NCBI RefSeq assembly: GCF_033153115.1
Contig: NW_026889777.1
Coordinates: forward strand, 13,640,001 to 13,704,000
Direction of reading: 5' to 3'
Source of the DNA: Saccostrea echinata
Taxonomy: Eukaryota
DNA length: 64,000 nt
Under the pieces are notes generated by a model. That model was not told the origin of the DNA and did not search any database. It saw only the letters and a list, made by a program, of their open reading frames with translations. Below are positions 3,568-31,800 of this stretch, piece by piece; within the stretch, counting starts at the first letter, position 1, and every line of letters starts with the position of its first letter. The position numbers and the translations under genes were made by a program.

Positions 3568-5599
3568 AAAATGACTTTTTTTTTCTTTAAAAAATGTGTT
3601 CTGCCAACAACAGCTAGAGATTTTTTAAAAAGTAGTGTTTATTACTGTGTACTACATGTTCAGAAGTAAAATTCTATAAGTGACATTTTTCAAGAAGTAC
3701 CCCTGCGTGACTTCCAGGACAGACACGAGATATTAATAAAACTGTAGCACCAAAACTGGCAGACGAAATACATTCAGTTGTGTTGTTTATCATTTGGTAA
3801 GAAAAACAGTCGTAGCATTCTGTATACAAGTACACCGCCTTTTTTCTTCCAGAAACTGAAACTTAAACCGATAGTCAATTCAGGTATTTCATTTTTATTA
3901 ATTGCATTCTATGCCATGTATGATAGGAAATATACATGTGTAATAACCAGTCATGAGTGATATGCAATACAATAACTTTTTGGTTAGTAAGAGTTCATAA
4001 AAAGCCTCAAAAATTTAAAGTTACTGGCAAGATGTACATGTACAGCTAAATTCACTAGGGAGGGCCTCACAAACCAGCAGATTATGAATTTCAAGTAGAT
4101 ACAGATACGTAAAATAAATATTAACAAAGCTTCTTTGTACATTATTTAACAGAAAACGTGTACAGGAAATATATTAACACTTCAAATATGGCACAATGCA
4201 AAATTTAACATTATTCCTGAAAGACAAATGACCTTAAATGGGTTCATTACAATGAGGAATCGAAAAAGCTGATAGAACAAGAGCTTTCCTTAATAAGACT
4301 ATTAACACCCCCTCCCCCTGGGGTACACTCTAAACATCGCACGCTTGGAACTTTTATATTGTGAATCCATACGAGACTGATTTGGATTCATGAGAAACTC
4401 GATCATACACAAATTTTGTCAAAATGATCTGTTAATTATACTCATTTCCAAAATCAGGTAACATTTTTAGTAACCGTTACACAACAACAAGACCGATCAA
4501 TTTCTGCTAATGAAGACTATAAAGTTTGCAATAAAATCTGCAATTTTTAAATTAGTGTAATTCAATCAATTTTCAAAGTATTTGTCCATATGTATTCTAG
4601 GACGGTACAGACAGAACAAAAAATACCCTGCGATCCTCCATCTCTAGGGGCAAAAAGTTTTAAAAGTATTGTATACAGGATATTTTCGACACTTTTTCCT
4701 TCTATGCAAGTGGACGAATTTAAAATAGGGCGAATGCAAACACGACAGCATTATCCCTTTAACATAATCTGGACATAATTAAAATGGCACAAACTTGATT
4801 CAGGTGTGAAAAGACAAAAAAATACACGGGGCGAAAATAACCCTGTATACAATACTAATCGGCTTAATATACATGTTTCTGTTTAGGAGTATATAGGTTC
4901 TCAACAACAGCTAAAGATAATGCTTCAAAAAATGAATGACCGTGGTCTCAGGCGCATTGCGTTTACATTATATTATTTTCTTACGTCTAATTTGTTTTAT
5001 ATACTTACATTTCAAACAATTAACATTCCTTCAAATGCTTTACATTTATGAAATGTAAAAAAAAAAAATAAAAACGGGATAAAGTGAGGCAAAAATCAAT
5101 ATTAAATGATAAATAAAAATCATATAAAAAAACAAAGTATTCAAGGAAAACATAATATTAATATAAATATTAATGTTTGATAAAATATAAATAAATGTGT
5201 ATTTGATATAAATGTATAACATTTCAAAAGCTAACAATATTGTGTTCTAAGAGTATTTAAGAATATTTGTAAATAAAATTCTATGAAGTATAGCATTACA
5301 CCTTGTAACAAATAGACTATTATACAAGTGCTGAATAATACTCTGTCAATTTCCCAAATTAAGCCTACATCCAAATAAATATACACAAGTACACATTTAC
5401 TGCGAATAAAAAAAACCGCATCAACTTTTTTCTTATGCATATCCAAGTGTTCATTGTGACCAGTGGTTGTTCTTGCTAAATTTCAATGATTTCATCTTTT
5501 ATAAATGTGTATTTTGCATCTGTTGATGATGTTTTCAATTTACATACATTTGAGAATTCAACAGTAATTTATTAACTAAAAAAAAAAACATACATGCCC

Positions 5600-6223
5600 T
5601 TGTTTCACACAGACTAATACACCAAAAGAAGTTATAAGTGAGTGATGGAGTTACTGAGTTCCGGATTCACACAAAGGTGCATATACATGTACCCAAAGAA
5701 TTGAATGGAGCTACTGAAATCAGCTGATTTCACAGAGGATACCAGAAGAAGTTAAAGGTCACAGTGATGGCGTTATTGAGTTCTGATTTCACAGAGACTA
5801 ATTCAAGGTGCATACTCCACAAGTGGATACCAGAAGAAGTTAAAGGTCACAGTGATGGCATTATTGAGTTCTGATTTCACAGAGACTAATTCAAGGTGCA
5901 TACTCCACAAGTGGATACCAAAAGAAGTTAAAGGTCACAGTGATGGCGTTACTGAGTTCTGATTTCACAGAGACTAATTCAAGGTGCATAAACCACAAGA
6001 GGATACCAGAAGAAGTTAAATGTCACAGTGATGGCGTTATCGAGTTCTGATTTCACAGAGACAAATTTACGGTGCATACTCCACAAGTGGATACCAGAAG
6101 AAGTTAAATGTCACAGTGATGGCGTTATTGAGTTCTGATTTCACAGAGACTAATTTAAGGTGCATACTCCACTAGAGGATACCAGAAGAAATTAAAGGTC
6201 ACAGTGATGGCATTATTGAGTTC
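5600..6223 (-). repeat. 88-bp tandem array copying the last 22 codons, stop and 19 nt of 3' UTR of WFS1
   Basis: ATACCA(G/A)AAGAA at 5739, 5827, 5915, 6003, 6091 and 6179 (period 88). Degenerate copies at 5600-5730. Confidence 0.95.
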
Positions 6224-9200
6224 CCTTTTTACCATCTCCTCTACGCTCTCCTCTTCCAGATCCATCATCAGGTCTAGCGGCCTGCTGGTACATGTAATGT
6301 GTCTCAGTGCCAGTTTTGGGTTCCTTGTGCCAAGATCTTTTATCAGTGTACCAGTAAACTCTACTTTGTCGTTAGTTTGCAAAGCTGACAATGTCTCTCT
6401 GAAACTGTGACCTGCATCTAGTTCTGCTGTTACATAATCTGGCATTGTAATGTAAACTTCAAATGTGTACGTGTCCAGATTCCTCAGATGACATTCGTGA
6501 CCTAGATCATCCATGGTTCTACACAGTTTGTGCTCTGATTCTGTTTTATTCACATCGTCACAATCTCCAAACCTTTGTCCATATAAACAACGAATTTCGT
6601 TTGCAATAAAAACAGGAAATGCACTCAGGAGCGGCTCAATGTTATTTGTTACACTCTTAATTTCAGCACGTGCAAATTCCCCATTCCATGTAACTTTTTG
6701 TCCTTGAAGGTGTAGACATTTAAAGCTTTTATCAAGCTCATTGTCTCCACAAAAATCCATATATTCTGAAAAAGACATATTAAATGGTTTTGGGCTTTTT
6801 GTTGTAGGTAATCGGATAAAAATTAGCGGGAGGATTGCCAAAACACCAAATACAACCATTATGGCAATCTTCACAGGTTTCATTTTGCTTTCTAACTTCT
6901 TTCCAACAAAGACTTTTGTCTGGGTCATCAACAAAGGTACTGCAGCAAAGATCAAAGTGATCAGAAGCTTTCCAAATATCTGTGTATGGAGGAGACTGTA
7001 AAACATATAGATGATGCCTCCAGCAATTAGCAACAAAGCAAGGGGGATCAGAAATGGCAAGAGGAAATAGCCCAGTGTGGCTCTTATCAAGCCTTTCCAA
7101 GAAGAAAATGGAAAGAAACTTAACATGAGGTTGAACCAGAAATAACAGACAAGGTGTGGAACAAGAACTCTGTACACACCTTTCCAGGACTTCTGTGCTG
7201 CCATTACTACAAAGATAAGAGGGATCAACAGAAAAGCAATGGATGGGATTCCAAAATGGATCTTAAACCCTGATCCACAATCTATAGTAAATATTGCATC
7301 TGTAAAAATATGAAGTAGTGTTGTGAAAACTGGTATTTGTGGAAAATGATGAAAGAAAGTTGGTAAGGCAGACAGGAGATTGCAAAAAAGAGACAACAAT
7401 GTCAGTAAATCATAATGATCACTAAGGGCAACAAAGCACACGGCTGAGAGGGCTCCGCAAAGAACACAGATTTCAGAACAAGGGACGTAACTCTTGTTTG
7501 CAAGTGAAAAACTGACCACCATTAAAGGTAGAGCACCAAAAAAGACTAGATACGGTGTCAAAGAGTTCCATGTGAACTGAGACTTTGTCTGCTCTACGTC
7601 AACTCCAACGTCGTATGTCTTAAGCACATCAGCAAGCTTGCTTGCTTCCTTCAGTTTCCTCTTCTTGTAGAACATCTGTAGTGTTGTGACCCCCATGACT
7701 CCCAGGGTGAGGTAGAATATGACAAGGGGGACAACCTGGAAGATGAGGGCAGCACTGATGAAGCTGTAGAGGAAGAAGACTGAGAGGAGGTAAATCTGAT
7801 TGGTGGGAATCATCTTCATCACAAAGTCCAGGCCTTCTTTGGAGACATACTCTAACCCAGTCTCATACAGGGCAACTGCTGTCTCTTTTGGATATCTGGT
7901 TACCTAAAGAGAGGGAAAAAACCTTCAATATAAAGCTGAAAAATATATCTTGAGATGTTAACTTATACATGTATACTTGAATTTAGTTTAACTATTCTTG
8001 TTAAAAAATAAGTTTCATCCACCTAGAATTAAAAGGAACAGAACCATTATCAAATGAGTAAACCAATTATATGTGTAACCCTAAGTCATAATGAGTAAAT
8101 GATAATGCCTTATTGATATTACAGGTTCAGTAAGAGAGAGCAGGTCCCCAGCAGTAACTACATGTACCTCTTACATCATACAGATCACTGTCACCTGACC
8201 ATACGACTGAGAATTAGTGAGACTCTTAAAATATCATAGCACTAAGTTGCAAATGTGCTAGTGTGGTTAGAATGTTCTAGAATCACGGAGTAAGGAGTCG
8301 ATTCTCACATCAAGGGTTTGCATCCATTGCAGGACGTGGAGCTCAGTCCTTAATATGAGACTGTATGAACCAACATCCCATGCTGCAGTGTATGTTAGCA
8401 CAAATAAAGACCTCTCACTGCTAAATAGCAATAAGTGCCTAGTTTAGGTAGACCTACATTTTCACCCTCCTCCAACAACTGGTGGCAGAATAACAGCCAG
8501 ATATAAAAATATAGGAAAAAACCAAGGTCTTGATCCCTTCCCATTAACAAGAGGCCTTTGTGTAAACAGCTCTGAGCAATATTTATTCTATATTACAGTT
8601 ACTTTTGTTTTATGTAATATGTATCTTGAGCATACCTTTTCATACAGACCAGCATGCTTGTACTCAACTGAGCCTTCACCCATTTCATCAGGAGATAGAG
8701 TTATCTGCCCTTGAATCTTCTTTGACAGGACTTTGACAAATTCTGTTTCACTGATCGTATCACCAATTTTCTTCCCTGAAAAAGAAAGTTTTAATAAATT
8801 TTTAATGTACCATGTTAATTGATTAATTGATCATCTTAATTTTCCTATCCTGATACTCTGAGGTGCAAAATTCTAGTTACAACATAAAACTGTATGTATA
8901 TAGACATTGGTAAGGTTGCAAATAACCACTCGTTAATGCACCAATGGGAGTACATGTTATTTTTTCTTTGTCTGACAAACTCTTGAGAATTTATCGCCCA
9001 CATGGCGAGTTAAGATTTATCAGAATTTTTTTCAGTACCCAACCTTGTTTTGTCTCTACTTTAAAACACACTTTGATTTTCATTATTTTCTACCTATTGA
9101 ATATTTTCATGCCAACATTATAAGAGGTCTTGAAGTGAAAGAAAATGTGGAATTTTATATAAAGGGTGTCAAAATCAACAGAAAAAGAACTGATGTTTTT

Positions 9201-12061
9201 TAAATGTTATCTGCAACCCTGATTAGTTAGGTAAAGATAAAGTGACTTGCATATGAAATAATTAAGTTGGATGCATTTAATAGGTTTAAAAGAAATTAGG
9301 CTTGGATTTTTTTTTTTAGCTTTAATGCAAAACTACATGTAAGGATGAAAATCTGCATAACCATGATCTTTGGAAATAAAGTCTATAAACAGAAGATTAG
9401 TGTGTATATCGCACTTTCTATTAATATATACTTGTCTGGTATAAGAAAAGGAAACATAAAGAGAACAGAGTAGATAGATTAGATGTTGCTGAAATATTAA
9501 TTGTAAAGTTAAAATAACCTTTGTTGGTTCAAGTTCGTATTATTATCAAAAATTGAAATAAAGTGTAGCAGTGCCTGCATTTTTATCTGGGTGCACATTA
9601 TTCTTGTTCTACATTTTCATGTGCTCCTGGTCCTACATGTACAAACTCAGTCTGCATTAGAGGAGAAGATACAAAATATATCATAGTGGTTTGGGGAGTT
9701 CATGCAGTGATACATGTGTATATCTTTGTTTTACATGATCTCTGAACATGTACCTGCTGCCAGGAGCAGTTTCTCCTCCAGTTTATCACCCCCTGCAAGC
9801 TTTTTCACAGATTCTATGTAATCAGCACGAGACAGAACTTCCCTCTGAGTGCCGTTTATGGCTCGGAACATATTTTTGGCAGCTCGACGAATCTTTTTCT
9901 CAACATCTGAGGTCTCGAGGCACCAGTCAATTACCTCTCTGTTGGAATCATCCACACCTGGAATCAGTTCAGTCTTATATTACTTCAATGAAAATTTAAG
10001 CAAGTAGTTAAACCTGATTTAAGTGACTTATCAATGGAAATTCTTAAATGGTCTCATAAGTCAGGTAGACTTATACAGGTAAAGCAAAGAAATCATATTC
10101 TAGCAATTTTCGTAGAAGATGCATAAATACTACATAGTAATATATGTACTTGTTTGTTTTCGATGTGTTTTACACTATTATGACTGTCACAGGTTTAGGT
10201 TAAAAACGCTCAGGAAAATAATAAGCTCAAAAAGGAAAAACAAACCAATATAATGACAATCAGAAAAAAAAAACGAAAGGATTTTATGCAAAAATGTATA
10301 CAAGTTTTATACACTTCTTGTCAAAACCATTTCAAAGTTTATCTTTATTTTATGCTTTTAATTTGCTTTTTTTTTTTTATTTTTGGATAAATTTGCTTCT
10401 TTACAAATTGCATTCAAACCTCATTATCTAGAACTCAATGGGACTGAGAACAAACTTCGAGATATCCGAGGATTCGAGATATCCAGGGTAAGGGACTTCA
10501 AATTCACTTTGACATACACAGGGTATTCAAAATACCGAAGTTCAACTGTATCTACATTGTCACATTTATTTATGTTCATTAAGCCTATACAAACTAATAT
10601 AGTATGAATTTATATGGTTTCTGCATTTTACTTCTCTAAATTCAATGAAATTTTCAAAAATTGTCAATTTAGGGGACATGGAAATTCAATGAATTATTTC
10701 TTAAAGCGATATATATATCAGACAGTAATTTAAAATTTCATACAGGAATAGATTTTTCATAATGATCTCTGAAACATGTTTATATAATGTGCCAGCTATT
10801 ATACTCACATATTTTTCATCTCCTATATGTATGGTTATCCACCAGAAATCACAGTTCATATACATATTGGGAAAATAACTTGAATATCTCTTATCTTTCA
10901 TGTTTATGAATACACCATTGTGGAGTGTATTGTGGACCATATTGACATTTGTATGAAATCATTATTACAGTACCAAGGAAAATATGAATGCAAACTTTAA
11001 CACCTAAAAACTTATGTCTCAATCTATATGGTATAATACTTTATAACACAAAAATTATCCTTTTCGCCTATTTATACCTGTTTTAGTTTGGAGACATTTG
11101 TTCAAGAGTTCATCTGCTTTCTCATTTCCTTGTTTGGAAGCCTCAATAAGCCAAGTGACAGCTACTTTCCCGTACTTTTGTCGATCTTCCTCAGAACCTG
11201 AGTCTGCAAGCTTTAGATAGTGCTCGCCTAACCGAACCTGACTCGCTTCATCCCCGTCCGATGCCAGCTTCTCCCACTTCTGAATGTTTTCCACACTCCC
11301 TAAAACAATGCAAGGTGAATAATTTTAGATGCATGTAATACATGTGCATGCAACAAGGAATATTTTGCATTGAGGTAACACTCCTCCTAAAAAAGGACAA
11401 ATTTTATGATTTAATGGACTTCATTCCAATTAATCCGAGATTCCTCTGGCTCTAACCCCTGCTTTTATATTTTGACATGTGCACATGCCCCTGCACATGT
11501 CAAAATATAAAAGCAGGGGTTAGAGTCAGGGGAATCTCGGATTACATTCCAGTCATCCTTAAATGTCAAACACTACTCAGTTTTTTGTTTTTTGTTGTTG
11601 TTTTTTTTTTCAACTTTCTAGTCATTGTCAATGTAATCTACGTTTCTTTTCCTTGGAAATTTGTAAACCAAAACTTTTTTAGGTTCGTGATTTGAATGCA
11701 GGATGTTACCTGAGGGATACATCTTTTGCTAAAGTTTCAAAAGCAGCAATGTTTAAATTATCTCTACTCTGGGTTTCTTCCTAGTATATCTAAAGAAAGC
11801 TACTTCAATTAGCTAAATAGAGCTACAGTATGTAATTCAAGGTACTGATTCTACTGAACCTGCTAATTTAGGGACCCCATTCACTGATTTAGGACCCTCC
11901 ACAAACAGGGAATCTTAAGTTTGCTGCCAAAGCATGCAAAGGCACGGGCAATGAGTACGTCATTTTTTCATATGCATGATTTATTATGATTGTCAGAATA
12001 GCCAGTGCAAGTAAGGCTTTTAAAAGTTTATTATCTTACCTGATGAATCGCCTTCCGCCAT
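6155..12061 (-). CDS. WFS1: Wolframin (ER membrane glycoprotein), ~778 aa. Exons 12040-12061, 11078-11299, 9754-9957, 8636-8775, 6155-7903
   Basis: All introns GT-AG with matching phases (1,1,1,0). Sel1-like N-terminus (QVRLGEHYLK...AVTWLIEASKQG), IPTNQI, multi-TM region with HLVCYFW, Cys-rich and OB-like luminal domain (CLHLQGQKVTWNG, RCLYG), long last exon. Confidence 0.92.
8257..8520 (+). mobile_element. Degenerate tRNA-SINE in WFS1 intron 4
   Basis: A-box-like TAGTGTGGTTAG, B-box-like GAGTCGATTC and body TAAAGACCTCTCACTGCT shared with the other copies. Confidence 0.5.
11431..11544. mobile_element. 114-bp hairpin MITE with 9-bp TSD
   Basis: 53-bp near-perfect arms TAATCCGAG.../...CTCGGATTA, flanked by CATTCCAAT and CATTCCAGT. 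Confidence 0.8.
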
Positions 12062-28812: not shown

Positions 28813-31800
28813 TCAAGTTTCAAGATGAAAAAAAATATCTTTGTGGTATGAAACTGGTATTAAATCAACAAATTGAGGAGAAAGGAAAGATAAAATTCAT
28901 CAAAGTTATATGTACATGTATGAGCAAAGTCAAAAACAGAAAAATTCAGGTGCCCAAAACTTTACTACACAATTGACTACACAATGCCAACAGTTGTATA
29001 TTCAGAATGAAGTCTCATACTTACACCCAGCTCCCATGAACATGACGAACAAGACGGGATAGAAAAACTTGAAGCACATGATCAACACGTACTCGTGGGC
29101 AACAGCCGAGATCAAAAACACACAAGCCATGGCAAGGGAACGATTGTTGGGGAAAAGCTGTGAATTATCAATTCAATTAATTATGTATTTATACATAATG
29201 TACAAAATACATATATGTACTTCAACAGTATTTTTAAATACTGTTGTACAATAGTTTCACATCTTTCACAGACTAAGGACTTCATTTTCTTAGTACATGT
29301 ACAAGTATATTACATGTACTTAAGCAAATGAGTGAATTTTATTCCTTAATGAATGCCTACATGTATATGAACACTATAAAATATACAAATTGAGTTTCAT
29401 TTTCTTGCCTTTCTCAGAAACCTAAATAAATGACTCATCTACATTCTGTATATTAATACTCTATATTCATGCGCGATCCTACATGTTAGATATTTGGTGA
29501 GTAGAAACTAAGACAGTTCTACTAGTTATCAACTACCCGGTATTAATTAATACAAGATGAATGGAAAAACTAACAACATATTTAGCAAATCATCAGTGTT
29601 TAAAAATTATCAATTTTAATAGAGTTTAGCAATTGTGGATAGAGATTACAAGGCTGTACAGATGACCTCAAATAAAATACATGTAAGATTAGTTTATACC
29701 CTAGTGTCTCTATAAAAAAAAATATAAATCAAAATAGGAAATACCTTGAAAGCATCCTTGTAGATGTAAGTGTACAACCAGTCATGTACAACAATATTCC
29801 AAGTCCTGTAGTAGCTAGCAAATGATGTGGAATTCCACCAGTCCTATGGAATTATATAAAATAAGCAAATATTTTAATAAAAGTAACAATTTCCATTAAT
29901 AAATTTTAAATAAAGCTATCTCCTGTAAATGATAGTTATCAAAAAAATGTTTAAAGGTAATTAATATAGATTGATGCTCATGGAATGTGTTAAAAAAAAT
30001 CTTTTCAGAATACAATTTGTATTTATGTGGTATACAACAATAAAAGTAACATAACTGATACACAGTGCAATGCTGAACAAACCTTGTAAAACATTCTGTC
30101 TGCAAAAGTCATCATTTCAGCAAAGGCATTAAACCAGGAATGAAGAATAGCAAAGAAACCTAGAACAAAATGGAAATGTTCAATTAATCTAAATATAAAC
30201 TAGATCATTACAGCCCTCATTTATACATGATTGTATAATCAGTCTGCTATTCATGTTCATATGTATAAAAAATTCAAAACTTCTATACTCCCATTTAAAC
30301 ATCACTTACCCAAAACTAAGACTAGAGTGGCAGGCAACATGGATCCAAACACTGACAGGATCAAAGCTTTGGCTGTTATGTGTTCACGGCCAAAGTTACG
30401 GAACACGGGCACTAGGAACCTCTCAAAGATGTAATATGTGTAGAACAGACAAGCAAGCACCTGTCCCAAGTTACTGACCACGTAACTCCAGCGAATCTTC
30501 TGTGTCCTGTAGAGTAGTCAATTATTTTTAATACATGTGTAACTAAGGAGGAGAAAAAAATGCAAATGACCATACTAGGATTAGAACCTAGGCCCCCTGA
30601 ATCAGTAGTCAAGTGTTCTACCAACTGAACTACATGGGCAATGGTTATCAAACCTGCCTGATCACTACACATGTTTTTGTTTCAATTCAGTTATTAAGAG
30701 GTAGAGAAAATGATGTAACTGTTGAACAATCTCTACTGTCTTTTACATTTATGGAATACTATTTTAGTTGTTGTCAAAAAATATCAATGAAATGACGCTA
30801 AGTACTAAATGGACATGTTCCTAACAGTGAAAAGGAAAATCTTTTGTTTTATTCAGAGAAATGTCTCTGTTGATTAAATATATGCTATGAATACTTCTCC
30901 AATTCAGGGCTCAAGCAGTAGCCTATTGTATATAGTCCTTGACTCATTTTATCAATATGTAATATTTGGTTATTCTTAAAAGAATTTGAAGAAATATTAT
31001 CTGAGTGTATATATATCACAGTTTATTTTCATTGCTGTTTTCAAAAGTAATTCCCAGAGACTAACCTGAAATTTGACACAGAGAGAACTAGTTTTTTTGA
31101 GTTAACATTTCTCATTTATTACCTTGGATACGCGTCCCTGTAGATAAGGGTTGGGAGGAATTACCTTGGATACGAGTCCCTGTAGACAAGGGTTGGGAGG
31201 AATTACCTTGGATATGAGTCCCTGTAGACAAGGGTTGGGAGGAATTACCTTGGATATGAGTCCCTGTAGACAAGGGTTGGGAGGAATTACCTTGGATACG
31301 AGTCCCTGTAGACAAGGGTTGGGAGGAATTACCTTTGATACGAGTCCCTGTAGACAAGGGTTGGGAGGAATTACCTTGGATATGAGTTCCTGTAGACAAG
31401 GGTTGAGATTACCTTGGATACGAGTCCCTGTAGACAAGAGTTGGGATGAAGAGGAAATACAGATACTTGGAGAAATCAGGACAAACGTGATCCTCAGAAC
31501 TATCATCTGTAAAACATACACAATGCTCCATACAAAGATTGTATCCATTGCAAATATATACAGGTATACAGAGATAATGAGGACCTTATTTTGAAGCAAA
31601 TCAATTGGGTATGAAATGCTTAATCACAATTTTTTTGGTCAAAAGAAAATTCCATATGAAAAAGAATTTTATTTAATGATTTTCAGCAATTTGTCCTCAA
31701 AAATCAGCATATATTTTTGCAATACCCAGAAGTAATATTAGCTACTTATAATGCAAAGAAAAGTAACTCTTACACTCTGATGCAGAATGAATTGTTGGCA

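What the first reader, a model, noticed from the sequence alone, without database searches (positions are those of the whole stretch)
5600..6223. WFS1 3' UTR is an array of copies of its own C-terminus, varying mostly at silent sites
Seen: after the WFS1 stop lie four full 88-bp copies (6067-6135, 5979-6047, 5891-5959, 5803-5871), one truncated copy and older decayed copies of ELNNAITVTFNFFWYPLVEYAP*. Copy 1 differs from the coding copy at 6 positions and all are synonymous. Across the full copies I count 7 synonymous sites plus a stop-to-stop change (TAA>TGA), against 3 altered codons (N>D, N>S, E>V) that are each confined to one copy. Every variant shared by several copies is silent. Untranslated DNA should not show this bias. 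Inference: (a) units exchange with the constrained coding copy by unequal crossover or conversion, so the array archives past coding alleles and acts as spare C-termini, or (b) units are translated. Each copy is preceded by ...AAATCAG|AA CTC, a phase-1 acceptor-like site that would be in frame with the phase-1 (G|GT) donors of exons 1-3. Its pyrimidine tract is weak. Plain readthrough fails because 88 = 3n+1 and a TAA follows 9 codons later.
Basis: partly seen in the sequence, partly recalled or inferred. Interest (0 to 1): 0.8.

Follow-up and report, generated by a model that had tools for sequence, protein, structure and literature searches.

The report
Stop-codon minisatellite in oyster wolframin gene
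The end of an oyster's wolframin gene, stop codon included, has been copied head-to-tail about seven times into its own untranslated tail; this looks like an ordinary unstable repeat of a kind common in this genome, and its excess of silent differences is real on paper but rests on thirteen sites.

Summary
On the minus strand an 88-bp unit (last 22 codons of a wolframin/WFS1 homologue, stop, 19 nt of 3'UTR) is repeated: the coding unit, four full copies, one copy with an internal deletion and two decayed copies. The gene is 100% identical to NCBI 'wolframin-like [Saccostrea echinata]'. Transcriptome contigs from 3 studies carry array junctions; the array lies inside a long 3'UTR.

Of 13 variable sites, 8 are silent (nominal p 0.0003-0.02). 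Against a functional reading:
- The 19-nt UTR tail is as invariant as the replacement sites.
- Replacements hit conserved residues, and one (Asn>Ser) is shared by three copies.
- Distal copies carry stops and indels.
- No contig splices into the array.
- Four comparator arrays from the same genome show no bias (12 of 38 silent, 9.4-11 expected).

A mosaic pattern, one structural variant and two silent states shared with a relative's coding copy fit exchange among units and silent change on the coding lineage.

Verdict: a stop-codon-spanning relative of the 'mirage' junction minisatellites, which earlier notes of this scan report as frequent on other DNA of this genome. The 'spare C-termini' and 'translated units' readings are not supported. 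Interest is modest.

The parts
6155..7903 (-). Last exon of the wolframin (WFS1) homologue, coding part: 582 codons in phase 0, stop TAA at 6157-6155.
   Evidence: ORF. Pfam WC-rich (78.9 bits, cut-off 24) and WCOB (73.4 bits, cut-off 23.4, residues 450-553 of 555). 100% identity to a 778-aa NCBI 'wolframin-like [Saccostrea echinata]'. Acceptor and frame.
6136..6223 (-). Unit u0, the coding unit: ELNNAITVTFNFFWYPLVEYAP, TAA, and a 19-nt tail ending ...GTGAAATCA.
   Evidence: The tail motif VTFNFFWYPLVEY is the majority consensus of 25 mollusc wolframins; N767, F768 and P772 are invariant.
6048..6135 (-). Unit u1: same peptide, TAA. It has 6 silent differences from u0 plus one in the tail.
   Evidence: The u0>u1 junction is carried by a contig of run X1 lying at 6135-6221 with 0 differences.
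5960..6047 (-). Unit u2: N>D and E>V (2 nt), stop TGA.
   Evidence: The u1>u2 junction is carried by a contig of X1 at 5993-6100 with 1 difference.
5872..5959 (-). Unit u3: N>S (AGT) and silent TTT, stop TGA. Both variants recur in decayed copy u7.
5784..5871 (-). Unit u4: same peptide as u0, stop TGA.
   Evidence: A contig of X6 at 5758-5844 with 0 differences spans u4>u5.
5724..5783 (-). Unit u5: a unit with a 29-nt internal deletion. It is absent from one contig of run X6.
   Evidence: 59 of 59 aligned nt identical to the majority unit; joint 5723>5783 skips 59, with 14 letters fitting either side.
5598..5723 (-). Units u6 and u7: decayed copies with deletions, replacements and in-frame stops.
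   Evidence: 80% and 89% identity over 60 and 61 aligned nt, several gaps. One search finds 5621-5671 at 83% identity.
5715..5732 (.). Perfect 18-bp palindrome at the junction of u5 and u6.
5568..5573 (-). The only AATAAA between 5000 and 6160 on the gene's strand, about 25 nt after the last decayed unit.
   Evidence: Contigs nevertheless run on to 5350 and beyond.
5350..6154 (-). 3'UTR as far as it was laid. It contains the whole array.
   Evidence: contigs of X1 (5350-5737, running 149 nt further), X5 (5431-5737) and X6 (5364-5723). Contigs break at 6194 and 5737, the array's edges.
6067..6165 (-). First of five ATG-started downstream ORFs (32 codons, MHLKLVSVKS + the 22-residue tail). The ATG in one unit reads the next unit in the coding frame. 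The others end at 5979, 5891, 5803 and 5730.
   Evidence: There is no evidence of translation.

Best explanation
This is a minisatellite made by tandem duplication of an 88-bp piece that spans the end of the wolframin coding sequence, its stop codon and the first 19 nt of the 3'UTR. Translation ends at the first stop, so every further unit is untranslated 3'UTR and the array is tolerated. It turns over like other minisatellites. The central units exchange sequence by unequal crossover, slippage or conversion and stay 91-97% alike (3 to 8 differences per 88 nt), while the distal units escape and decay. The silent-site excess among the units is not a sign of function. I read it as a mix of three things: silent substitutions on the constrained coding lineage, which are captured or left behind by duplication and exchange; some mutation bias, including one CpG site and GC-rich third positions; and chance in 13 sites, sharpened by the array having been picked for this pattern. 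Shown: the array, its transcription within the 3'UTR, the absence of splicing into it in contigs, the counts, the mosaic, and the comparators. Inferred: the turnover mechanism and the origin of the bias.
For: - Structure and register.
- This is the only copy of the unit and of the C-terminal domain in the 923-Mb assembly. All 4 DNA matches and all 6 protein matches lie at this locus.
- The array is transcribed as 3'UTR, and 0 joints into it are seen in 4 runs, all of which show the normal introns.
- Copies are not kept as protein. Unit u2 changes N759 and E775 and u3 changes N759. Both residues are majority-conserved in 25 mollusc wolframins. Unit u7 has a 2-nt deletion and an in-frame stop. 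The Ser variant is shared by u3, u6 and u7.
- The non-coding tail is no more variable than the replacement sites: 1 of 19 against 4 of 52, Fisher p = 1.0. It is far less variable than the silent sites (p = 0.005). The oddity is therefore an excess at silent sites, not protection of the peptide.
- Turnover is supported by the mosaic (5 of 6 site pairs with four gametes) and by the structural variant in X6.
- Coding-lineage share: position 33 is T only in u0 and C in u1-u5 and in the relative's coding copy.
- Four comparator arrays not chosen for silent bias give 12 silent of 38 variable coding-like sites against 9.4-11.0 expected (p = 0.21-0.42). One of them is a second stop-spanning array, at the PRMT5 C-terminus, with 4 silent and 13 non-silent sites.
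- The class is known. Amphioxus 'mirages' show concerted evolution inside the cluster and exclusion of the cluster boundaries (PMC3087553, passages read). Human F7, CBS, LMNB2 and PDGF have junction minisatellites (PMC1557585, passages read).
Against: - The nominal bias is strong: 8 silent of 13, p = 0.0003-0.02. It stays at p = 0.002-0.05 after removing the two u0-private changes.
- A simple 'snapshots of one coding lineage' tree, in which at least half of the tree length is non-coding, gives only p = 0.006-0.012. So the benign sources do not fully account for the bias without chance.
- In unit positions 14-57, u1 differs from u0 at 4 silent sites, as many as the relative's coding copy does, yet u1 has 0 replacements.
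- Two of the three replacement events sit in the first 8 of 66 columns (p = 0.04, post hoc). Selection through unequal crossover with the coding unit would predict exactly that.
- Earlier notes of this scan report 'synonymous-only' proximal copies in three other genes of this genome. I did not test them.
- The comparator sample is small: 4 arrays, 38 sites.
Confidence: 0.62

Rival explanations
1. The downstream units are under real, second-order purifying selection because unequal crossover or conversion often moves their 3' parts into the coding position. Haplotypes whose copies carry replacements keep spawning defective alleles and are removed. The array would then be a reservoir of silent variants and of usable C-termini.
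For: - Silent excess.
- A mosaic that involves u0.
- A structural variant.
- Two silent array states equal to a relative's coding states.
- Replacement events concentrated at the unit's 5' end, where a crossover with u0 would rarely expose them (2 of 3 within 8 of 66 columns, p = 0.04).
- Recombinant units built from u0 with u1 or u4 would encode the same peptide as u0; those built with u2 or u3 would do so only where the crossover leaves their replacement sites out.
- By inference, in a species with large effective population size an exposure rate above about 1/(2Ne) would be enough.
Against: - By inference, the same exchange would homogenise silent sites. Yet the units differ at 7 of about 14 silent sites, and pairwise by 3 to 8 positions. 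That implies exchange slow relative to mutation, too slow to impose effective selection.
- A replacement variant (Ser) persists in three copies.
- Comparator arrays show no bias.
- WFS1 loss is recessive in humans (my own knowledge), which would weaken selection on rare recombinants.
- 'Spare parts' is not a selectable function.
Confidence: 0.2
2. The units are translated. This could happen through splicing into the CAG|AA sites. It could also happen as 32-codon downstream ORFs that start at the ATG formed by the Tyr-Ala codons of each unit and read the next unit in the coding frame.
For: - Four complete ATG-started ORFs of 32 codons and a fifth, truncated one of 27 codons exist, because 88 = 3n+1 puts the ATG at unit positions 59-61 in frame with the next unit.
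- The first ATG has A at -3.
- The four full copies have no indel or premature stop.
Against: - No joint into the array appears in 4 runs, all of which show the normal introns. These are contigs, so rare forms are not excluded.
- The pseudo-acceptor lacks a pyrimidine tract, unlike the real acceptors.
- The spliced product would lack all membrane and lumenal domains.
- In the downstream-ORF frame the three variable sites of the leader (positions 66, 68, 73) all change the residue: MHLK, MHRKF, MHLE.
- Units u2 and u3 replace conserved residues.
- By inference, a cytosolic 32-mer of a lumenal OB-fold strand has no obvious role.
- NCBI lists one product ending at the first stop.
Confidence: 0.05
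3. Assembly artefact: haplotypes or reads were stacked into a false or inflated array.
For: No genomic DNA run was available. All 4 runs laid are spliced, so they are transcriptomes. The junctions u2>u3 and u3>u4 were not among the rows shown. Copy number cannot be read from contigs.
Against: - Contigs carry u0>u1 and u1>u2 with the assembly's own variant combinations (X1), and u4>u5 (X6).
- Long exon contigs of X1, X5 and X6 all break at 6194, where u0 and u4 become identical over 31 nt.
- Summed contig depth in 5750-5949 is about 4 to 9 times that of the exon in three runs from three studies.
- By inference, a 487-bp array is easily spanned by long reads in an assembly of 425 contigs.
Confidence: 0.03

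Closest known systems
[quoted passage not shown] PMC3087553 and PMC3902484, passages read.
   Same: The first unit is the genuine end of a coding segment and the further units are non-coding echoes. Normal mRNA processing is undisturbed. Units are 81-100% alike, with concerted evolution inside the cluster and divergent boundary units. Copy number differs between haplotypes.
   Different: Here the unit spans the stop codon inside the last exon, not a splice site, so the echoes are transcribed into the mature mRNA as 3'UTR. The host is a bivalve, not a cephalochordate.
Human junction minisatellites whose first monomer spans an exon-intron boundary (F7 IVS7 37-bp VNTR, CBS, LMNB2, PDGF, interferon-induced 6-16). 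PMC1557585, abstract and passages read.
   Same: They are polymorphic VNTRs seeded at the 3' end of a coding segment. Only the first signal is normally used.
   Different: Those repeat a donor site and lie in an intron. This one repeats a stop codon plus 22 codons and lies in the 3'UTR.
Silent-cassette systems that feed an expressed copy by gene conversion (Neisseria pilS/pilE, chicken pseudo-V genes). Recalled from my own knowledge; no call made.
   Same: Untranslated partial copies lie next to an expressed copy, with which they can exchange sequence.
   Different: Those cassettes diversify the product and transfer is documented. Here the variants are mostly silent, the product is conserved, and transfer into the coding unit is only inferred from a mosaic of 4 sites.
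A second stop-spanning array in the same genome, at the PRMT5 C-terminus (locus L033:7284-7537, period 73, 3.4 copies, 78% matches)..
   Same: The last 15 codons, the stop and 25 nt of UTR are repeated in tandem after the genuine stop.
   Different: It is older and decays like neutral DNA: 4 silent and 13 non-silent variable sites, and 14 of 28 non-coding columns vary.

Membership tests
Minisatellite / VNTR | Head-to-tail units of roughly 10-100 bp in several copies. | tested here: met
   Period 88, 5.5 copies, 93% matches, 0% indels, plus two decayed units.
Minisatellite / VNTR | Length or structural polymorphism among individuals. | tested here: inconclusive
   One contig of run X6 lacks the 59-nt truncated unit, while another X6 contig fits the assembly. 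Copy number cannot be read from contigs, and no genomic reads were available.
Mirage / junction minisatellite | The first unit spans an exon-intron boundary. | tested here: not met
   The unit spans the CDS/3'UTR boundary (the stop codon) within one exon. No intron lies there.
Mirage / junction minisatellite | The repeated signals are not used; the normal mRNA is made. | tested here: met
   All four runs laid show two of the three normal introns and three show the third; 0 joints enter the array. The annotated protein ends at the first stop. Contigs drop rare forms.
Mirage / junction minisatellite | Concerted evolution inside the cluster, with boundary units excluded. | tested here: met
   Units u1-u4 differ by 3-7 positions. 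The distal units are 80-89% identical with gaps. Unit u0 carries 2 private changes.
Silent-cassette donor array (conversion into an expressed copy) | Documented transfer from cassettes into the expressed copy. | not testable with these tools
   The only evidence is a four-gamete mosaic that involves u0 (5 of 6 site pairs). Population or pedigree data are needed.
Silent-cassette donor array (conversion into an expressed copy) | The cassettes diversify the product. | tested here: not met
   Units u1 and u4 encode the identical peptide. The tail is conserved across 25 mollusc wolframins.
Wolframin (WFS1) family (host gene) | Wolframin cysteine-rich and C-terminal OB-fold domains above Pfam cut-offs. 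| tested here: met
   PF20053 at 78.9 bits (cut-off 24) and PF19913 at 73.4 bits (cut-off 23.4). The Sel1-like repeat on the exon-1 piece scores 24.9 bits, under its cut-off of 27. The protein is 100% identical to an NCBI wolframin-like protein.

The most novel reading that the evidence does not exclude
The silent-site excess is real and general. In this high-diversity bivalve, tandem echoes of coding-segment ends (splice donors and stop codons alike) stay coupled to their constrained master copy by recurrent exchange. The non-coding copies then evolve under second-order purifying selection and store silent variants of the coding unit. The constrained master copy also keeps re-seeding the array, which would explain why such arrays cluster at the 3' ends of coding segments in this genome.
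Probability: 0.12. Interest if true: 0.7.

Novelty: new variant of a known kind. Interest (0 to 1): 0.3.

Why it matters
If the ordinary reading holds, the value is descriptive. It gives a clean, transcribed example of a minisatellite seeded at a stop codon, and so extends the 'mirage' class from splice junctions to CDS ends. It also shows that annotation and variant callers will meet repeated pseudo-C-termini in oyster 3'UTRs.

It is a caution as well. A striking synonymous-only pattern in a dozen sites can arise in non-coding echoes of exons. The exon lineage contributes only silent changes, and many such arrays exist from which to pick.

If the bold reading were true, it would show indirect selection on untranslated DNA through exchange with a coding neighbour. 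That would be testable genome-wide in a species with very large population size.

Tried and rejected
A scan of metagenome contigs with the last 211 residues gave 128 pattern matches, none confirmed. The only outgroup information is one contig of run X10. There, differences nearer than about 32 nt to a contig end are not listed, and 194 rows of the table were not shown. The states at unit positions 1-13 and 58-88 are therefore unknown. 'No difference' at positions 39, 48, 51, 56 and 57 rests on the assumption that all rows of that contig's depth were shown.
- Paralogue as donor of the silent variants: rejected. All 4 DNA matches and all 6 protein matches in the assembly lie in this array.
- Plain allelic diversity as the source. 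X5 and X6 differ from the assembly at 10 positions each in the 1707-nt exon contig. By my inference that is too little for 6 silent differences in 66 nt.
- Single-lineage 'snapshot' model: insufficient on its own (p = 0.006-0.012).
- Mutation bias alone. Transition bias, CpG and GC>AT bias raise P(silent) only to 0.30.
Only 4 comparators were analysed. Two further candidates were left out because their exonic part is under about 12 nt: L031:8638-8863 and L018:4553-4641. L032:524-743 was left out for lack of ORF evidence.
- Literature. A search for 'minisatellite' with 'spans the stop codon' returned 0 papers. A six-term search returned 68 papers, of which I read the 12 listed titles and abstract starts; none described this. 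These are narrow searches of the held library only. Additional files 4-6 of PMC3087553 (mirage alignments and trees) are supplements and were not seen.
Exon pieces were searched apart, and only the last exon was compared with P0001.
Full report
WHAT IS THERE

On the minus strand of the window an open frame runs from 7903 to a TAA at 6157-6155. Its product carries the wolframin cysteine-rich domain (78.9 bits, cut-off 24) and the wolframin C-terminal OB-fold domain (73.4 bits, cut-off 23.4, residues 450-553 of 555), as shown. It is 100% identical to a 778-residue NCBI protein named 'wolframin-like [Saccostrea echinata]'. The next hit is S. cucullata at 93%. In all, 58 proteins reached E <= 1e-10 among 8000 scored candidates.

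Tandem Repeats Finder reports one array at 5737-6223: period 88, 5.5 copies, 93% matches, no indels, score 855. Cut in register, the coding unit u0 (6223-6136) holds three parts:
- the last 22 codons, ELNNAITVTFNFFWYPLVEYAP;
- the stop codon TAA;
- 19 nt of 3'UTR.

Four full copies follow: u1 to u4, starting at 6135, 6047, 5959 and 5871. After them comes a copy with a 29-nt internal deletion (u5, 5783-5724). Two decayed copies end the array: u6 at 80% identity and u7 at 89%, over 60 and 61 aligned nt, both with gaps.

The unit and the C-terminal domain occur nowhere else in the 923-Mb assembly. All 4 DNA matches and all 6 protein matches lie here.

IS THE ARRAY REAL AND EXPRESSED?

The look-up of sequencing runs listed 12 runs, all kept as Logan contigs; 11 hold part of the stretch, from 4 studies. 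I laid four of the twelve on 5350-11340 at 85% likeness:
- X1, organism A;
- X5, organism B, 2018;
- X6, organism A, 2025;
- X10, organism C, share of words 0.05.

All four are spliced, including the one guessed to be DNA. All four skip 7901-8632 and 9956-11075, and three of them (X1, X5, X10) skip 8775-9752, with GT..AG ends on the gene's strand and no depth inside those introns apart from a high-copy repeat at 10414-10491 (see 'Seen in passing'). All four are therefore transcriptomes, and no genomic reads could be consulted.

Contigs of X1 lie on 6135-6221 (0 differences) and 5993-6100 (1 difference), so they carry the u0>u1 and u1>u2 junctions with the assembly's own variants. A contig of X6 lies on 5758-5844 (0 differences), across u4>u5. 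The long exon contigs of X1, X5 and X6 all stop at 6194, which is where u0 and u4 become identical over 31 letters. 3'UTR contigs resume at 5737 or 5723 and run to 5431, to 5364, or beyond 5350. Summed contig depth over 5750-5949 is 51, 150.9 and 30, against about 9, 17.5 and 7.4 over the exon.

So the array sits in the mature mRNA, inside a 3'UTR that runs past the only AATAAA (5573-5568). An assembly artefact is unlikely, but copy number is not verified. One X6 contig joins 5723 to 5783, skipping the 59-nt truncated unit, with 14 letters fitting either side. That is a structural variant.

THE COUNTS

Among the five full units 13 of 88 columns vary:
- Seven are synonymous: unit positions 12, 27, 33, 39, 48, 51, 66.
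- Four are replacement nucleotides in three codons: Asn>Asp and Glu>Val in u2, Asn>Ser in u3.
- One keeps the stop: TAA in u0 and u1, TGA in u2-u4.
- One lies in the 19-nt tail.

1. The Ser codon of u3 is also present in u6 and u7, and u3 shares the silent T at position 39 with u7. A replacement variant is therefore shared by several copies.
2. The three coding donors have phases 1, 1 and 0. The donor before the last exon is AAG|GT, and the last exon starts in phase 0.
3. An ATG formed by the Tyr-Ala codons at unit positions 59-61 is in frame with the next unit. Each copy is therefore the end of a 32-codon ATG-started downstream ORF.

IS THE SILENT EXCESS MORE THAN CHANCE?

A random mutation in the unit is silent with probability 0.16 under a uniform model. 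The probability rises to 0.30 with transitions x3, CpG x10 and GC>AT x5. The tests give:

| Test | Result |
|---|---|
| 8 silent of 13 variable sites | p = 0.0003 to 0.02 |
| 6 of 10, without the two changes private to u0 (positions 33, 51) and with positions 56/57 counted as one event | p = 0.002 to 0.05 |
| 7 silent of 11 within the 66 coding-like columns | p = 0.003 to 0.010 |
| Model in which units are successive snapshots of one coding lineage (non-silent sites evolve on at least half of the tree) | p = 0.006 to 0.012 |

The excess is nominally real. It rests on 13 sites in one array that was picked because it looked like this.

WHAT KIND OF EXCESS IS IT?

The 19-nt tail is non-coding in every unit, and only 1 of its 19 columns varies. 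That is no different from the replacement sites (4 of 52, Fisher p = 1.0) and far below the silent sites (7 of 14, p = 0.005), both. The pattern is 'too much variation at silent sites', not 'a peptide protected amid neutral decay'.

The replacements that do exist hit residues that are majority-conserved in an alignment of 25 mollusc wolframins. Its consensus tail reads N.A..VTFNFFWYPLVEY.P, and N767, F768 and P772 are invariant. The distal copies carry deletions and in-frame stops. None of this fits copies maintained as protein.

EVIDENCE OF EXCHANGE AND OF A CODING-LINEAGE SHARE

The four parsimony-informative sites (12, 27, 48, 68) form six pairs. Five pairs show all four gametes when u0 is included, and none does without u0. 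Either u0 is a mosaic of states found in different copies, or the copies recombined among themselves. Site 12 is a CpG and may be recurrent, but the three pairs without it remain incompatible.

The relative (X10) has a contig of depth 21.1 over about 6135-6242. It differs from u0 at four places:
- 6191 and 6197. These make AAC at position 33, as in u1-u5, and ACA at position 27, as in u1 and u2.
- 6200 and 6203. These make GTC and ACA, which are seen in no unit.
All four changes are synonymous.

The T at position 33 is therefore best read as a silent substitution on the S. echinata coding lineage after the copies were made. Gene/pseudogene comparisons always contain such a contribution.

X10 gave no depth over 5350-5949, and its u0 contig has the same depth as its exon contig (21.1 against 19.8). 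The relative thus shows no sign of the array in its transcripts, though contigs cannot prove absence.

COMPARATORS

Earlier notes of this scan say that arrays anchored on exon ends are frequent in this genome. They gave me the word 'mirages' and the PRMT5 lead. I fetched 200 kb beside the window and 30 kb around PRMT5, found through PF05185.

In the window plus the 200 kb, TRF gave 14 rows with period >= 30, at least 2.8 copies and at least 80% matches. Three of these arrays begin in an exon end: WFS1, SOAT1 and an ankyrin-like exon. The PRMT5 stretch has 9 arrays in 30 kb.

Four arrays not chosen for any silent pattern were counted in the same way as the WFS1 array:

| Array | Silent | Non-silent |
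|---|---|---|
| PRMT5 C-terminus plus stop | 4 | 13 |
| PRMT5 exon end | 4 | 4 |
| Ankyrin-like exon end | 2 | 2 |
| SOAT1 exon end | 2 | 7 |

Pooled, 12 of 38 sites are silent against 9.4-11.0 expected (p = 0.21-0.42). The second stop-spanning array, at PRMT5, decays like neutral DNA. Three further candidates were left out; the reasons are given under Tried and rejected.

By inference, about 3 exon-anchored arrays per 264 kb over the 800 windows already read in this genome means several hundred such arrays. A handful at p of 0.001-0.01 is then expected by chance. The scan's notes list about four 'synonymous-only' cases, which I did not test.

MECHANISM

The most likely sequence of events is as follows.
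- A slipped or unequal duplication of 88 bp across the stop codon was harmless, because translation ends at the first stop.
- Further unequal exchange expanded the array.
- The central units keep exchanging, and the distal ones have dropped out and decay. The amphioxus clusters are described in the same way (PMC3087553, passages).

The 'translated' readings fare poorly:
- No joint into the array is seen in four runs.
- The pseudo-acceptor...GTCTCTGTGAAATCAG|AA, lacks the pyrimidine tracts of the three real acceptors.
- Any such product would lack every membrane and lumenal domain.
- In the downstream-ORF frame the three variable leader sites all change the residue.

The strong form of reading (a), indirect selection through exchange, has three points in its favour: the mosaic, the structural variant, and two of three replacement events lying in the first 8 of 66 columns (p = 0.04, post hoc). 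By my own reasoning it is nevertheless hard to sustain. Exchange frequent enough to expose the copies to selection would also homogenise the silent sites, and those are the most diverged part of the unit.

COMPARISON WITH WHAT IS KNOWN

Minisatellites whose first monomer spans an exon-intron boundary are described in two places:
- amphioxus 'mirages' (PMC3087553 and PMC3902484, passages read);
- human F7, CBS, LMNB2 and PDGF (PMC1557585, abstract and passages read).

This array works like them but fails their defining feature, since it spans a stop codon and not a splice junction. I therefore file it as a variant of that kind and not as a member. My two narrow searches found no description of a stop-spanning case. 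That is weak evidence of absence from print.

VERDICT

- Observation: confirmed.
- Interpretation: partly supported. Exchange and some archiving of coding states are supported; spare parts and translation are not.
- Best explanation: an ordinary stop-codon-spanning junction minisatellite whose silent excess is part coding-lineage history and part chance (0.62).
- Interest: 0.3.
- Boldest reading not excluded: real second-order selection on exon echoes in this genome (0.12).

SEEN IN PASSING

- The SOAT1 array is an exon end plus GTAA.
- A high-copy repeat lies at 10414-10491.
- An 18-bp palindrome sits at the array's distal edge.
- A T-run of variable length lies at about 5578.

Noticed in passing
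window 31118-31450 (minus strand): A 42-bp x 8 array whose unit is the last 38 nt of a SOAT1-like exon (...[13 protein letters not shown]) plus GTAA of the donor. Its copies show 2 silent and 7 non-silent variable sites. I read it as an exon-end junction minisatellite, not as acceptor-microexon cassettes.
   Followed up: partly
L033:7284-7537 (G000:C54:59607284-59607537, plus strand): A second stop-spanning array. The last 15 codons of PRMT5 (...LPIHNPKGRSYTIGL), the stop and 25 nt of UTR are repeated 3.4 times at 78% matches. It decays like neutral DNA: 4 silent and 13 non-silent sites.
   Followed up: yes
L031-L033 (G000:C54:59580001-59610000): There are nine tandem arrays of period 24-99 in 30 kb around PRMT5. 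At least two begin in an exon end...YQQYLDHLWQ|GTAAC at L031:9570, and ...TWKW|GTAAG at L031:8638.
   Followed up: partly
L027:8356-8710 (G000:C28:13872356-13872710, minus strand): A 52-bp x 6.8 array at 94% matches. It is made of the last 22 nt of an ankyrin-like exon (...CILSNLLA) plus GTAAGT and 24 nt of intron.
   Followed up: partly
window 10414-10491 (inside the first coding intron of the WFS1 gene): A short stretch with very high summed contig depth in all four transcriptome runs (169 to 1512) and many loose ends on both sides. It looks like a dispersed high-copy repeat present in many transcripts.
   Followed up: no
window 5715-5732: A perfect 18-bp palindrome where the truncated unit meets the first decayed unit. 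It could favour hairpins and slippage at the array's distal edge, or it could be a by-product of decay.
   Followed up: partly
window 5577-5578 and 5407: Run-length differences between individuals in the T-run just after the array (+1 in X1, -3 in X5 and X6) and in an A-run at 5407. 3'UTR contigs continue past the AATAAA at 5573-5568.
   Followed up: no
window 14164-22000 (plus strand): Exon-like ORFs of a PARP-like gene, head to head with the WFS1 gene: a lysine-rich N-terminus, a WGR-like piece and a regulatory-domain-like piece. A run of N lies near 18.8-19.0 kb and was left untouched. The gene name is from my reading of the peptides and was not tested.
   Followed up: no
runs X1-X4: These runs are guessed to be DNA in the listing. 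Only X1 was laid; its contigs skip the gene's introns and give no depth inside them apart from the high-copy repeat at 10414-10491, so it behaves as a transcriptome.
   Followed up: partly
L018:4553-4641 (G000:C28:13778553-13778641, plus strand): A 39-bp x 2.3 repeat begins at the end of a CDK-like exon (...LTLVFEYCDQDLKKYFDSCNGEIDQDIVK). It is too short for any count.
   Followed up: no
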